From assembly GCF_006345805.1 (NCBI RefSeq), contig NC_043025.1, forward strand, positions 9,734,001 to 9,798,000: DNA of 64,000 nucleotides. The letters are read 5' to 3'. The notes below the pieces were generated by a model that had not been told where the DNA came from, did no database searches, and worked only from the letters and a program-made list of their open reading frames with translations. This document shows, one piece after another, positions 14,090 through 17,310 of this stretch. How positions within the stretch are numbered: the first letter of the stretch is position 1; the number at the start of each line of letters is the position of its first letter. This stretch comes from Octopus sinensis. Its lineage: Eukaryota. The position numbers were made by a program, and so were the translations under genes.

Positions 14090-16500
14090 TCTGTGGTTTG
14101 GGTTTCAATTCCTTCCTGGTCTAAAAGTTGTTTTTTTTTTTTGTTATTAACTGAAATAAATTGAAATATCTTTATTTTCCCCTTAACATTGTTGCTGTTT
14201 TGTCTGTTAAATGGTGGTTTGGGTTTCAATTCCTTCCCAGTCAAAAAGTAATTTTTTTTTGTTATTAACTGAAATAAATTGAAATATCTTTTTTTTTTAC
14301 CCCTTAACATTGTTGCTGCTTTGTCTGTTAAATGGTGGTTTGGGTTTCAATTCCTTCCCGGTCTAAAAGTTATTTTTTTTTTGTTATTAACTGAAATAAA
14401 TTGAAATATCTTTTTTTTTTTACCCCTTAACATTGTTGCTGTTTTGTCTGTTAAATGGTGGTTTGGGTTTCAATTCCTTCCCGGTCTAAAAGTAATTTTG
14501 TATTTTACCCCTTAACATTCTTGCTGTTTTGTCTGTTAAAATGGTGGTTTGGGTTTCAATTCCTTCCCGGTCTAAAAGTAATTTTGTTTTTTACCCCTTA
14601 ACATTGTTGCTGTTTTGTCTGTTAAATGGTGGTTTGGGTTTCAATTCCTTCCCAGTCTAAAAGTAATTTTTTTTTTACCCCTTAACATTGTTGCTGCTTT
14701 GTCTGTTAAATGGTGGTTTGGGTTTCAATTCCTTCCCAGTCAAAAAGTACTTTTTTTTTGTTATTAACTGAAATAAATTTAAATATCTTTTTTTTTACCC
14801 CTTAACATTGTTGCTGCTTTGTCTGTTAAATGGTGGTTTGGGTTTCAATTCCTTCCCAGTCTAAAAGTAATTTTTTTTTACCCCTTAACATTCTTGCTGT
14901 TTTGTCTGTTAAATGGTGGTTTGGGTTTCAATTCCTTCCCAGTCTAAAAGTAATTTTGTTTTTTACCCCTTAACATTGTGGCTGTTTTGTCTGTTAAATG
15001 GTGGTTTGGGTTTCAATTCCTTCCCAGTCAAAAAGTACTTTTTTTTTTTGTTATTAACTGAAATAAATTTAAATATCTTTTTTTTTACCCCTTAACATTG
15101 TTGCTGCTTTGTCTGTTAAATGGTGGTTTGGCTTTCAATTCCTTCCCAGTCTAAAAGTAATTTTTTTTTACCCCTTAACATTGTTGCTGTTTTGTCTGTT
15201 AAATGGTGGTTTGGGTTTCAATTCCTTCCCAGTCTAAAAGTAATTTTTTTTACCCCTTAACATTGTTGCTGCTTTGTCTGTTAAATGGTGGTTTGGGTTT
15301 CAATTCCTTCCCGGTCTAAAAGTAATTTTTTTTTTGTTATTAACTGAAATAAATTTAAATATCTTTTTTTTTTACCCCTTAACATTGTTGCTGTTTTGTC
15401 TGTTAAATGGTGGTTTGGGTTTCAATTCCTTCCCGGTCTAAAAGTAATTTTTTTTTTGTTTTATTAACTGAAATAAATTTAAATATCTTTTTTTTTTACC
15501 CCTTAACATTGTTGCTGTTTTGTCTGTTAAATGGTGGTTTGGGTTTCAATTCCTTCCCGGTCTAAAAGTAATTTTGTATTTTACCCCTTAACATTCTTGC
15601 TGTTTTGTCTGTTAAAATGGTGGTTTGGGTTTCAATTCCTTCCCGGTCTAAAAGTAATTTTGTTTTTTACCCCTTAACATTGTTGCTGTTTTGTCTGTTA
15701 AATGGTGGTTTGGGTTTCAATTCCTTCCCAGTCTAAAAGTAATTTTTTTTTACCCCTTAACATTGTTGCTGCTTTGTCTGTTAAATGGTGGTTTGGGTTT
15801 CAATTCCTTCCCAGTCAAAAAGTACTTTTTTTTTTGTTATTAACTGAAATAAATTTAAATATCTTTTTTTTTACCCCTTAACATTGTTGCTGCTTTGTCT
15901 GTTAAATGGTGGTTTGGGTTTCAATTCCTTCCCAGTCTAAAAGTAATTTTTTTTTACCCCTTAACATTGTTGCTGTTTTGTCTGTTAAATGGTGGTTTGG
16001 GTTTCAATTCCTTCCAGGTCTAAAAGTAATTTTGTTTTTTACCCCTTAACATTCTTGCTGCTTTGTCTGTTAAATGGTGGTTTGGGTTTCAATTCCTTCC
16101 CAGTCTAAAAGTATTTTTTTTTACCCCTTAACATTGTTGCTGTTTTGTCTGTTAAATGGTGGTTTGGGTTTCAATTCCTTCCAGGTCTAAAAGTAATTTT
16201 GTTTTTTACCCCTTAACATTCTTGCTGTTTTGTCTGTTAAATGGTGGTTTGGGTTTCAATTCCTTTCCGGTCCAAAAGTAATTTTTTTTTTGTTATTAAC
16301 TGAAATAAATTTAAATATCTTTTTTTTTACCCCTTAACATTGTGGCTGTTCTGTCTGTTAAATGGTGGTTTGGGTTTCGATTCCTTCCCAGTCAAAAAGT
16401 AATTTTTTTTTGGTGGTTTGGGTTTCAATTCCTTCCCAGTCAAAAAGTAATTTTTTTTTGGTGGTTTGGGTTTCAATGTCTTCCCAATCTAAAAGCATTT
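14090..16500 (+). repeat. Tandem array of about 84/120-bp units (left arm of foldback structure)
   Basis: Unit core AAATGGTGGTTTGGGTTTCAATTCCTTCCCAGTC repeated more than 20 times. Confidence 0.95.
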
Positions 16501-16570
16501 TTTTTTTTGTTATTTACTGAAATAGATTTAAATATATGAATTTTTCCATTAATTTTGTAGTAGCTTCTGT

Positions 16571-16752
16571 GGCCTAGTAGGTAAGGTGCTAGAAGTAGTG
16601 GCATAATAATGGTTGAGGTTTCAAACCTCTGCCAGGAAATCAAGATTTTTCACTTTTTGTCTCTAGTGGAAAAAAAAAATGAATTTCCTGGCAGAGGTTT
16701 GAAACCTCAACCATTATTATGCCACTACTTCTAGCACCTTACCTACTAGGCC
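16571..16752. repeat. Perfect 70-bp inverted repeat, 42-nt loop, tRNA-like arms
   Basis: 16571-16640 is the exact reverse complement of 16683-16752. Confidence 0.95.
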
Positions 16753-16799
16753 GAAGCTGCTACAAAATTAATGGAAAATTCAGATATTTAAATCTATTT

Positions 16800-17310
16800 T
16801 CAGTAAATAAACAAAAAAAAATTAATTTTAGACTGGGAAGACATTGAAACCCAAACCACCAAAAAAAATTACTTTTTGACTTGGAAGACATTGAAACCCA
16901 AACCACCAAAAAAAAATTACTTTTTGACTGGGAAGACATTGAAACCCAAACCACCAAAAAAAAATTACTTTTTGACTGGGAAGACATTGAAACCCCAACC
17001 ACCAAAAAAAAATTACTTTTTGACTTGGAAGACATTGAAACCCCAACCACCAAAAAAAAAATTACTTTTTGACTGGGAAGACATTGAAACCCAAACCACC
17101 AAAAATAAATTACTTTTTGACTGGGAAGACATTGAAACCCCAACCACCAAAAAAAAATTACTTTTTGACTGGGAAGACATTGAAACCCCAACCACCAAAA
17201 AAAATTACTTTTTGACTGGGAAGACATTGAAACCCAAACCACTATTGAACAGGCAAAGCAGCAACAATGTTAAGGGGTAAAAAAATAATAAAGATATTTA
17301 AATTTATTTA
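16800..17310 (-). repeat. Inverted copy of the tandem array (right arm); further inverted units at 17430-17540, 17745-17850, 18345-18420
   Basis: GACTGGGAAGACATTGAAACCCAAACCACC units. Confidence 0.9.

What the first reader, a model, noticed from the sequence alone, without database searches (positions are those of the whole stretch)
14090..17310. Foldback-like structure centred on two convergent tRNA-like Pol III cassettes
Seen: a perfect 70-bp inverted repeat (16571-16640/16683-16752) whose arms extend outward into mirror-image tandem arrays of the same unit (left about 2.4 kb, right about 0.5 kb plus scattered units to 18420). The core has an A-box (TGGCCTAGTAGG) and a B-box-like motif (GGTTTCAAACC). 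Each copy points into the 42-nt loop, which holds an oligo-T run on each strand, so each could give a roughly 85-90 nt Pol III RNA. Each array unit also carries a B-box-like GGTTTCAATTCC followed by a T-run. Inference: either a Foldback-type transposon with modular IRs, or a SINE-head-derived satellite that may act as a TFIIIC-binding array between the plus-strand unit and the MCM4 3' end.
Basis: partly seen in the sequence, partly recalled or inferred. Interest (0 to 1): 0.7.

Follow-up and report, generated by a model that had tools for sequence, protein, structure and literature searches.

The report
Palindromic repeat array beside octopus MCM4
A 4.3-kb block of short tandem repeats downstream of the octopus MCM4 gene flips orientation at a real, inherited palindrome whose centre is kept identical on both arms, probably by gene conversion. 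It is most likely ordinary repeat DNA rather than a jumping gene or a pair of working tRNA-like genes.

Summary
The 70-bp inverted repeat (16571-16640 / 16683-16752) is perfect, and mirror-image arrays flank it (14093-16507 and 16812-18420). The window is Octopus DNA, and the structure lies about 2 kb past the MCM4 stop codon. A second, independent assembly of the same locus (O. vulgaris GCA_951406725.2, about 0.8% diverged) has the same palindrome, the same 42-nt spacer and the same outer boundaries, so it is not an assembly artefact. Monomer counts differ between the two. One C/A difference between the assemblies is mirrored in both arms, inside a 104-bp zone with no arm-specific differences, which points to arm-to-arm gene conversion.

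The "tRNA-like core" is a divergent, least-deleted monomer of the same repeat. The oligo-T runs in the spacer are that monomer's own T-run. tRNA/SINE likeness is only motif-level: ARAGORN and Rfam find nothing, and the box combination is expected about 0.2 times per random 64 kb. Foldback-transposon criteria that could be tested (target-site duplication, inverted terminal domains, extra copies in reach) are not met. Genome-wide copy number, transcription and TFIIIC binding could not be tested. Interest is modest.

The parts
14093..16370 (+). Left array: 23 head-to-tail monomers, L (~121 bp) or S (~84 bp), in the order LLLSSSLSSLSSLLSSSLSSSSL. It includes a ~1,076-bp higher-order duplication.
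   Evidence: TRF; anchor spacing; MAFFT of all monomers; self-BLAST 14171-15047 vs 15244-16122 at 97.4%
16371..16514 (+). Three 48-bp units (the B-box-like half plus T-run of the monomer). The innermost one carries the GTC variant that all right-arm units share.
16509..16569 (+). Left inner domain: spacer GTTATTTACTGAAATAGATTTAAATATA plus the 5' part of the core monomer. It is homologous to the L-monomer spacer and start (77-83% identity, E 1e-10 to 1e-12).
   Evidence: BLAST within the window; MAFFT
16570..16640 (+). Left core copy: A-box-like TGGCCTAGTAGG (16570-16581) and B-box-like GGTTTCAAACC (16618-16628). The perfect inverted-repeat arm is 16571-16640.
16641..16682 (.). 42-nt asymmetric spacer, identical in both assemblies. 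It holds T5 runs (16646-16650, 16654-16658) and A10 (16670-16679), which are the diverged T-runs of the two core monomers. Only ~13 nt (16654-16666) are truly unpaired.
16683..16752 (-). Right core copy (perfect inverted-repeat arm). In this window its A-box has lost the leading T through a TGT deletion.
16753..16811 (-). Right inner domain (mirror of 16509-16569). It has arm-specific differences that are shared by both assemblies.
16812..17242 (-). Right array of nine 48-bp units, all the GGTTTCAATGTC variant. There are eleven in the second assembly.
17243..17847 (-). Right outer arm: two extra-long (~230-310 bp) monomers. Their spacer carries a ~105-bp segment with a (CA)n run, followed by the start of a third monomer.
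17848..18345 (-). Insertion of the abundant tRNA-derived SINE (one full copy plus a partial tandem copy) into a monomer spacer. It is flanked by the 6-bp duplication CAGTTA (17842-17847 / 18346-18351). Joining the flanks restores the monomer spacer.
   Evidence: read directly; SINE heads listed; also present in the second assembly (same 621-bp anchor spacing)
18346..18420 (-). Remainder of the outermost right monomer. The array ends at 18420, with an identical boundary in the second assembly.
20519..20719 (-). Context: last coding exon of MCM4 (stop codon at 20519-20521). A minus-strand AATAAA lies at 18470-18475, about 50 nt from the array edge.

Best explanation
This is a real, inherited tandem-repeat array with no sign of mobility in the sequence I could reach. 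It lies in the intergenic DNA about 2 kb downstream of the MCM4 stop codon in an Octopus (vulgaris-group) genome, and it contains an inverted duplication.

All parts belong to one repeat family with nested deletion variants:
- an extra-long monomer (~230 bp, with a (CA)n-bearing spacer);
- L (~121 bp);
- S (~84 bp, spacer lost between two T-runs);
- a 48-bp unit (only the B-box-like half plus T-run).

The 'core' is a divergent monomer that keeps about 30 nt (the A-box-like part) which the array monomers lack.

Inferred history: a segment [array - spacer - core monomer - T-run] was copied in inverted orientation across a spacer of a few nucleotides, most plausibly by fold-back or template-switch repair or replication at the T-run. 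Afterwards each arm evolved on its own by unequal crossing-over and slippage (3 versus 9 48-bp units; a 2.3-kb L/S array with a 1,076-bp higher-order duplication on the left only), and the right arm received a SINE insertion. The innermost ~104 bp of the arms have been kept identical by arm-to-arm gene conversion.

The A-box, B-box-like motif and T-run are most likely relics of a tRNA/SINE-type ancestor, or partly chance. No function is shown. Likely physical consequences are hairpin or cruciform potential and, if transcribed through, a ~100-280-bp double-stranded RNA stem.

Shown: anatomy, homology of the parts, presence in two assemblies, copy-number turnover, the mirrored substitution, the SINE insertion.
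Inferred: the fold-back origin, gene conversion as the homogenising force, and lack of function.
For: 1. The perfect 70-bp inverted repeat and extended arms are confirmed.

2. MAFFT of all monomers places the core at a monomer position. Spacer and 5' part are shared (BLAST 77-83%, E to 1e-12). The 3' part aligns weakly to the monomer's B-box-like half and T-run (local alignment p~0.03). This explains why a T-run lies on each strand of the spacer.

3. L001, the O. vulgaris GCA_951406725.2 locus fetched through the MCM4 protein, is not the same sequence as the window. There are 17 substitutions in 2,067 aligned bases of unique flank (0.8%). It still has both core copies, the identical 42-nt spacer and identical outer boundaries.

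4. Monomer order and number differ between the two: LLLSSSLSSLSSLLSSSLSSSSL+3 versus LLLSSSLLSLSLSSSLSSLSSSLS+2 on the left, and 9 versus 11 48-bp units on the right. This is array turnover.

5. In the four-way alignment of the arms, 14 arm-specific columns are shared by both assemblies. They lie only outside columns 72-175. Inside that 104-column zone there are none, plus one assembly-specific C/A change present in both arms of each assembly. If the outer rate (5 in 71 columns) applied, zero in 104 has a probability of about 5e-4 (my arithmetic).

6. A SINE insertion with a 6-bp duplication sits in the right arm, in both assemblies. The arm is therefore old and genuine.

7. The window is packed with other tandem arrays, including tandemised copies of the abundant tRNA-derived SINE with periods of 160-183 bp. 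Local amplification of short elements is commonplace here.

8. No target-site duplication, no inverted terminal domain, and no other copy in the window or L001.
Against: - Genome-wide copy number could not be measured. No tool here searches octopus DNA, and the indirect attempts were empty. A multi-copy mobile element is therefore not excluded.
- The gene-conversion argument rests on one mirrored substitution plus the homogeneous zone. Selection on both copies would give the same homogeneous zone.
- The A-box (10 of 11), a B-box-like motif at a workable distance (48 nt) and a terminator together are uncommon (about 0.2 per random 64 kb). The odd GGTTTCRAxxCC B-box is also used by a genuine SINE family in the window. 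Some Pol III or TFIIIC activity is therefore conceivable.
- Homology of the core's 3' half to the monomer is weak on its own (p~0.03).
Confidence: 0.6

Rival explanations
1. A Foldback-type (or other TIR) transposon, or a fragment of one. The long modular inverted arms made of tandem subrepeats would be its terminal inverted repeats, and the spacer its middle domain.
For: The architecture matches the textbook scheme: unequal inverted arms with an outer domain of tandem repeats, a unique inner domain and a short middle domain, as described for Tetris/FB/Galileo (PMC4079207; anatomy).
Against: No 8-10-bp target-site duplication at any plausible pair of ends. No non-repetitive flanking domain in inverted orientation. 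The left end starts at GTGGTTTGGG and the right end at CTTTGTCTG of the monomer, so the termini are not equivalent. No second copy in the window or L001. Site and boundaries are the same in two genomes, so there is no insertion polymorphism. No transposase-like ORF is associated with it.
Confidence: 0.12
2. Two copies of a non-autonomous element that carries internal tandem repeats (Helentron/HINE-like or SINE-like) inserted tail-to-tail. The palindrome would be the junction of two insertions rather than an inverted duplication.
For: Mollusc HINEs carry short satellite-like arrays with a microsatellite upstream and a palindrome-bearing right flank (PMC7492417). Here the arrays end in a unique ~130-bp 'right flank' (spacer plus core). 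The outer parts of the arms differ by about 7%, as two old copies might.
Against: No left flank or subterminal inverted repeats could be identified. The array abuts unrelated sequence directly. The palindrome is formed by whole arms, not by a short 3' hairpin. No other copies are in reach. The arms share even the innermost GTC-variant 48-bp unit, which fits duplication of one local segment better.
Confidence: 0.07
3. Functional Pol III elements. Two convergent tRNA-like genes would each give an ~85-90-nt RNA, flanked by arrays of B-box-only (ETC-like) TFIIIC sites that act as a chromatin boundary at the MCM4 3' end.
For: - The left core has an A-box matching 10 of 11 positions, a B-box-like motif 48 nt downstream and T5 terminators. 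This was the only such composite in the window, against 0.2 expected.
- The same odd B-box, GGTTTCRATTCC, is carried by a SINE family that did amplify.
- There are 38 B-box-like motifs in 4.3 kb.
- The inner 104 bp are homogenised.
Against: - No tRNA call by ARAGORN at default settings. The relaxed call is indistinguishable from 24-42 calls per shuffled window.
- No Rfam tRNA hit at E<=10, although that model also misses true SINE heads.
- The predicted RNA is two hairpins, z = -1.75, not a cloverleaf.
- The B-box needs a 1-nt insertion plus a mismatch.
- In this window the right copy's A-box is damaged.
- The 48-bp units drifted to GGTTTCAATGTC.
- Divergence of the core (1 in 75) is no lower than that of the flanks (0.8%).
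- No expression data are available.
Confidence: 0.07
4. A hairpin-RNA source. Read-through from MCM4 (minus strand) or from a Pol III start would produce a long, near-perfect double-stranded RNA that feeds siRNA production or A-to-I editing.
For: Stem potential of 100-280 bp. The structure lies about 1.7-3.8 kb downstream of the MCM4 stop codon on the transcribed side.
Against: A minus-strand AATAAA at 18470 suggests that the MCM4 transcript ends before the array. There are no RNA data, and nothing distinguishes this locus from any other inverted repeat.
Confidence: 0.06
5. An assembly artefact (a chimeric fold-back read or a mis-joined inversion).
For: Palindromes inside tandem arrays are a classic site of long-read and assembly errors. 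Raw reads could not be inspected.
Against: - An independent assembly about 0.8% diverged has the same palindrome, spacer and boundaries.
- The arms are not identical. They carry arm-specific substitutions shared by both assemblies, different unit numbers and a SINE insertion in one arm only.
- The spacer is asymmetric.
Confidence: 0.02

Closest known systems
Foldback transposons and relatives with internally repetitive inverted arms (Drosophila FB, Tetris of D. virilis, Galileo)
   Same: Long, unequal inverted arms built from tandem subrepeats, a unique inner domain and a short non-coding middle. In Tetris the arm repeats also seed satellite-like arrays (PMC4079207).
   Different: No target-site duplication, no inverted non-repetitive terminal domain, non-equivalent outer ends, and no other copies in reach. 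Mobility is not shown.
Genomic palindromes maintained by arm-to-arm gene conversion (for example the ampliconic palindromes of primate sex chromosomes; from established knowledge, not tested here)
   Same: Inverted arms around a short unique spacer. Arms within one genome are more alike than orthologous arms between genomes (mirrored C/A substitution).
   Different: The scale is 0.1-2 kb rather than 10 kb to Mb. The arms are non-coding tandem repeats. Conversion seems confined to about 104 bp next to the spacer.
TE- or SINE-derived satellite-like arrays of molluscs (PcH-Sat from a Nin-SINE in Patella, PMC11121367; Cg170 and related repeats carried by Helentron HINEs in Crassostrea, PMC7492417)
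   Same: Short arrays of ~50-200-bp monomers in gene-rich DNA, with monomers carrying TE- or tRNA-promoter-like motifs and adjoining microsatellites. In this very window the abundant SINE is itself tandemised at several places.
   Different: Homology of the monomer to any SINE is limited to a 12-nt box. HINE flanks, subterminal inverted repeats and the short 3' hairpin were not found. The orientation flip is not a feature of those arrays.
tRNA genes, tRNA-derived SINE heads and B-box-only 'extra TFIIIC' sites
   Same: An A-box (10 of 11), a B-box-like motif, suitable spacing, downstream T-runs, and B-box-like motifs repeated without an A-box in the monomers.
   Different: No cloverleaf, no detection by tRNA finders, and a B-box with an extra T plus a mismatch. 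There is no SINE body or tail, no flanking duplications and no dispersed copies in reach. Binding and transcription are untested.

Membership tests
Foldback-type transposon | Long inverted arms containing tandem subrepeats around a short middle domain | tested here: met
   Arms 14093-16640 and 16683-18420, made of 48/84/121/~230-bp units, with a 42-nt middle
Foldback-type transposon | Equivalent termini, or a non-repetitive terminal flanking domain, in inverted orientation at both outer ends | tested here: not met
   The left end begins at GTGGTTTGGG and the right end at CTTTGTCTG of the monomer. The only flank similarity is a SINE in direct orientation.
Foldback-type transposon | Target-site duplication (8-10 bp in FB/Tetris) | tested here: not met
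   No shared k-mer of 7 or more bases between the left flank and any candidate right end
Foldback-type transposon | Multiple dispersed copies or insertion polymorphism | tested here: inconclusive
   No other copy in the 64-kb window or in L001. The site is the same and filled in two genomes. Whole octopus genomes cannot be searched with these tools (searches were empty).
tRNA gene or tRNA-derived SINE head | Cloverleaf recognised by tRNA finders or covariance models | tested here: not met
   ARAGORN finds 0 genes. There is no Rfam tRNA hit at E<=10. The relaxed ARAGORN call is no better than 24-42 calls per shuffled window. The MFE fold is two hairpins, z = -1.75. Caveat: the same tools also miss genuine SINE heads.
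tRNA gene or tRNA-derived SINE head | Internal Pol III promoter (A-box TRGCNNAGTGG, B-box GGTTCRANNCC, 30-60 nt apart) and a T>=4 terminator | tested here: inconclusive
   The A-box matches 10 of 11 (left arm). The B-box needs one inserted T plus one mismatch. Spacing is 48 nt and T5 follows. The composite is expected 0.2 times per random 64 kb. Alignment to the SINE-2 head gives p~0.004 for one variant and 0.12 for the other.
SINE (retroposon) | Body and LINE-type or A-rich tail, flanking duplications, dispersed copies | tested here: not met
   No similarity to either SINE family of the window beyond the boxes, and no dispersed copies in reach
Tandem-repeat (minisatellite or satellite-like) array | Head-to-tail monomers of high mutual identity, with copy number changing between genomes | tested here: met
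   TRF arrays at 92-97% identity. Different monomer order and number in the second assembly.
Palindrome with arm-to-arm gene conversion | Arms co-evolve: differences between genomes are mirrored in both arms, while older arm-specific differences persist outside the converted tract | tested here: met
   One mirrored C/A site, and zero arm-specific columns in a 104-column inner zone against 14 outside it. This rests on a single mirrored site.
Helentron non-autonomous element (HINE) carrying tandem repeats | Left flank with subterminal inverted repeat, internal inverted repeat and microsatellite; right flank with subterminal inverted repeat and a short 3' hairpin (PMC7492417) | tested here: inconclusive
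   No left flank is recognisable, since the array abuts unrelated DNA. No family consensus is available to compare. The only nearby microsatellite is a 2.9-kb (AT)n run 660 bp upstream.

The most novel reading that the evidence does not exclude
The two core copies are live Pol III units with an unusual extra-T B-box, the same one used by an octopus SINE family, and they are kept identical by gene conversion. They would give either a tRNA-like ~85-90-nt RNA or, on terminator read-through, a natural short-hairpin-type double-stranded RNA. The roughly 38 flanking A-box-less B-box motifs would bind TFIIIC as an 'extra TFIIIC site' array, forming a boundary between the MCM4 3' end and the upstream AT-rich repeat desert.
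Probability: 0.05. Interest if true: 0.7.

Novelty: new member of a known kind. Interest (0 to 1): 0.3.

Why it matters
If the main reading is right, this is a compact, well-resolved example of three processes at one locus. A tandem array acquires an inverted duplication. The palindrome centre is homogenised while the arms turn over by unequal exchange. And A/B-box-like motifs can sit in repeat DNA without implying tRNA genes or mobility.

It is useful as a caution for repeat annotation in the very repeat-rich octopus genomes, and as a small natural palindrome for studying hairpin tolerance. It would matter much more only if Pol III or TFIIIC activity, or mobility, were shown.

Tried and rejected
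1. tRNA identity. ARAGORN at default settings and Rfam (gathering cut-offs, and E<=10 on the region and on the isolated core) found nothing. The only Rfam matches are generic miRNA-hairpin models hitting the palindrome far below their cut-offs. Controls showed that Rfam also misses both genuine SINE heads, so its silence says little. Relaxed ARAGORN (ps80) calls the core 'tRNA-Leu', but it makes 64 calls in the window and 24-42 in shuffles, so I rejected that call.

2. Descent from the abundant SINE. Local alignment is not significant (p~0.08 for the core, 0.24 for the monomer).

3. Descent from the second SINE family. Only the 12-nt B-box and the A-box region match, and nothing in the body does. 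I kept this as motif-level resemblance only.

4. Looking for other genomic copies through protein space. ORFs through the core and the arrays were searched with the search for homologous proteins (nothing found). The 160-aa ORF through the 48-bp array was searched with the search of protein representatives. Its five hits are unrelated 16-residue-periodic proteins.

5. Exact-pattern scans of metagenome contigs for the monomer and the core: 0 hits.

6. Literature. No octopus satellite or foldback description matches. The recent O. vulgaris repeat paper has no such entry in its text or in the one supplement held. A full-text search for the motif returned only unrelated primers.

7. Target-site duplication and terminal-domain search at the outer ends: negative.

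8. A window-wide scan for close inverted repeats was swamped by self-complementary (AT)n and gave nothing usable.

9. My first A/B-box scan timed out. It was rerun.
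Full report
**Where we are.** The minus-strand exons in the window translate to the C-terminal part of MCM4. They are 100% identical to 'DNA replication licensing factor mcm4-A-like [Octopus vulgaris]'. The stop codon is at 20519-20521 on the minus strand, so the finding lies 2.1-6.4 kb downstream of MCM4, in intergenic DNA. 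A minus-strand AATAAA at 18470-18475 lies about 50 nt from the right edge of the repeat block. Whether it is the real poly(A) signal is not known.

**Checking the observation.**
- 16571-16640 is the exact reverse complement of 16683-16752 (70 nt) and cannot be extended by a base. The spacer is 42 nt.
- With gaps allowed, the arms run outward to about 16366 and 16955 at about 93% identity.
- The arms also run inward. TTTTTCAC (16646-16653) pairs with GTGGAAAAA (16667-16675), so only about 13 nt are unpaired.
- As single-stranded DNA, 16360-16960 folds at -282 kcal/mol, against -63 +/- 4 for shuffles.
- On the left there are 23 monomers of about 121 bp (L) or about 84 bp (S), in the order LLLSSSLSSLSSLLSSSLSSSSL, then three 48-bp units.
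- On the right there are nine 48-bp units and three more monomers, all inverted.

**How the parts relate.** A multiple alignment of every monomer with both core copies shows one family with nested deletions.
- S is L minus the 37-bp spacer GTTATTAACTGAAATAAATTTAAATATC, which lies between two T-runs.
- The 48-bp unit is the half TGGTGGTTTGGGTTTCAAT..CTTCCCAGTCAAAAAGTAA plus its T-run.
- The right-hand outer monomers are extra-long versions whose spacer carries a ~105-bp segment with (CA)n.
- The 'core' sits exactly at a monomer position. It is preceded by the same spacer, and its first ~30 nt match the monomer start (BLAST 77-83%, E 1e-10 to 1e-12).
- The core's 3' part aligns, weakly on its own (p~0.03), to the monomer's B-box-like half and T-run.
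- About 30 nt, the A-box-like part, are present only in the core.

The oligo-T on each strand of the spacer is therefore just the T-run that ends every monomer, seen twice because the monomer is mirrored. It is not an independent feature.

**Is it an artefact? An independent copy of the locus.** I fetched the genomic place of the O. vulgaris MCM4 protein (L001 = GCA_951406725.2, CATOCA020000001.1:384212-427772). It is not the same sequence as the window. The unique DNA between the array and MCM4 differs by 17 substitutions in 2,067 aligned bases (0.8%). The window therefore comes from another individual, haplotype or sister species.

L001 has both core copies, the identical 42-nt spacer, the identical left and right outer boundaries and the same SINE insertion. 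It differs in monomer order on the left (LLLSSSLLSLSLSSSLSSLSSSLS) and in the number of 48-bp units: two instead of three on the left, eleven instead of nine on the right. The window's 1,076-bp higher-order duplication (97.4% over 882 bp) has no counterpart there.

A read-level or scaffolding artefact is therefore excluded for practical purposes. The array is shown to turn over by unequal exchange.

**Concerted evolution at the centre.** I aligned the two arms of both assemblies, 193 columns in all.
- 14 columns are arm-specific and shared by both assemblies. These are old differences, and all of them lie outside columns 72-175.
- The 104 columns in between have no arm-specific difference.
- That zone holds the only assembly-specific change, C in both arms of the window and A in both arms of L001.
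- If the outer rate (5 in 71 columns) applied, zero differences in 104 columns would have a probability of about 5e-4 (my arithmetic).
- A change mirrored in both arms needs either two identical hits or transfer between arms.

I read this as arm-to-arm gene conversion over roughly the inner 100 bp. It rests on a single mirrored site. In L001 the perfect repeat is about 104 bp. In the window, private changes (a T in the left arm; a TGT deletion and homopolymer changes in the right arm) shorten it to 70 bp, and the right copy loses the first base of the A-box. The core's divergence between assemblies (1 in 75) is no lower than that of the flanks, so there is no sign of purifying selection. The power of that comparison is minimal.

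**Age.** The right arm has taken a 498-bp insertion of the abundant tRNA-derived SINE (17848-18345). The insertion is flanked by the duplication CAGTTA, and joining the flanks restores the monomer spacer (read; SINE heads). It is present in both assemblies. Outer-arm divergence is about 7%, against 0.8% between the assemblies. The inverted duplication is therefore much older than the split of the two genomes.

**tRNA or SINE likeness.**
- ARAGORN finds no tRNA in the window.
- Rfam finds nothing at gathering cut-offs. At E<=10 it finds no tRNA or SINE family, only generic miRNA-hairpin models on the palindrome, at about 34 bits against cut-offs of 60-90.
- As controls, the heads of the two genuine SINE families in the window are also missed by Rfam and by default ARAGORN. 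These negatives are therefore weak.
- Relaxing ARAGORN to 80% gives a 'tRNA-Leu' at 16553-16637. It also gives 64 calls in the window and 24-42 per shuffled window, so this call is meaningless.
- The predicted 91-nt RNA folds into two hairpins, z = -1.75, not a cloverleaf.

On the positive side, the A-box matches the consensus at 10 of 11 positions. The B-box-like motif lies 48 nt downstream and needs one inserted T plus one mismatch. A second SINE family in the window (heads at 6223-, 43197-, 54327+) uses TGGCCCAGTGG and the same unusual extra-T box, GGTTTCRATTCC, which also occurs in every L/S monomer. The core aligns to that head with p~0.004 for one variant and 0.12 for the other. BLAST finds nothing shared beyond the 12-nt box. 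A composite as loose as the core's (A-box, B-like motif, spacing, T4) is expected 0.2 times per random 64 kb.

So a tRNA/SINE-type ancestry is plausible but shown only at motif level. 'Pol III cassette' remains a hypothesis. All right-arm 48-bp units and the innermost left one have drifted to GGTTTCAATGTC, which does not look like selection for TFIIIC binding.

**Transposon tests.**
- No target-site duplication at any plausible pair of ends.
- The outer ends fall at different monomer positions.
- The only similarity between the flanks is a SINE in direct orientation.
- The core, the spacer and the monomers occur nowhere else in the window or in L001.
- Both genomes have the structure at the same site.

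These results fail the testable defining features of Foldback elements as summarised for Tetris (PMC4079207). They give no support for a HINE-type carrier (PMC7492417). What I could not do is count copies genome-wide, because no tool here searches octopus DNA. Indirect routes gave nothing. These were ORFs through the core and arrays searched in the protein collections and exact patterns in metagenome contigs.

**Context.** The window is crowded with tandem arrays. These include 81-bp, 185-bp, 63-bp and 43-bp minisatellites and kilobase-scale (AT)n runs. Tandemised copies of the abundant SINE, with 160-183-bp periods, occur at five places. Local amplification of short, SINE-like pieces is evidently routine in this genome. 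What sets this array apart is only its orientation flip.

**Verdict.** The most likely reading (about 0.6) is a real, old tandem array with no sign of mobility that underwent an inverted duplication, probably by fold-back or template switching at the T-run. The mechanism is inferred. Its arms then evolved separately, while the ~100 bp next to the spacer were homogenised by gene conversion. The A-box, B-box-like motif and T-run are relics, without shown function.

Rivals:
- a Foldback-like or other mobile element (about 0.12-0.2 in all);
- functional Pol III or TFIIIC elements (about 0.07);
- a hairpin-RNA source (about 0.06, not exclusive of the others);
- an artefact (about 0.02).

It is a new member of known kinds: a satellite-like array, and a small palindrome with concerted arms. 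Interest is about 0.3.

Noticed in passing
window 1-64000 compared with L001 (O. vulgaris GCA_951406725.2, CATOCA020000001.1:384212-427772): The window is not the public O. vulgaris reference sequence. Unique DNA differs by about 0.8% and the tandem arrays differ in copy number, while the MCM4 C-terminal exons are 100% identical at protein level. It must be another individual, haplotype or sister species.
   Followed up: partly
window 18059-18347, 29927-30460, 49088-49456, 61331-61832, 63303-63658: The abundant tRNA-derived octopus SINE (head GGAGTGGCTGTGTGGTAAGTAGCTTGC...GGTTCCGGGTTCAGTCCC; 28 heads in 64 kb) is itself arranged in short tandem arrays with periods of 160-183 bp at five places.
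   Followed up: partly
window ~6000-6250 (-), ~42980-43220 (-), ~54300-54540 (+): A second SINE family (~215 bp). Its head is GTGGAGGTGCAATGGCCCAGTGGTTAGGG...GGTTTCGATTCCCAGACCGGGCG, with an unusual extra-T B-box. It is not recognised by Rfam or by default ARAGORN.
   Followed up: partly
window 10579-13432 and 21779-23906: Two kilobase-scale (AT)n / AT-rich microsatellites (GC about 2-13%). One lies 660 bp upstream of the array and the other inside an MCM4 intron. Both are self-complementary and dominate any inverted-repeat scan.
   Followed up: no
window 25605-29030: A 63-bp minisatellite with 56 copies and strong G/C skew, inside an MCM4 intron. It produces spurious ORFs of up to 1,332 aa in several frames.
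   Followed up: no
window 4196-5234, 6369-7650, 40653-41516, 37222-37826: Further tandem arrays: 81 bp x13, 185 bp x7, 43 bp x20 and (AAT)n. About 15 distinct arrays occur in 64 kb.
   Followed up: no
window 7883-8644 (+) and 51158-52252 (+): ORFs of 253 and 364 aa that look by eye like reverse-transcriptase fragments of non-LTR (LINE) elements. They were not searched against any family library.
   Followed up: no
window 17306-17412 and 17546-17650: The ~105-bp (CA)n-bearing segment inside the extra-long right-arm monomers occurs twice and nowhere else in the window. It is unclear whether it is ancestral to the monomer or an old insertion that was then tandemised.
   Followed up: partly
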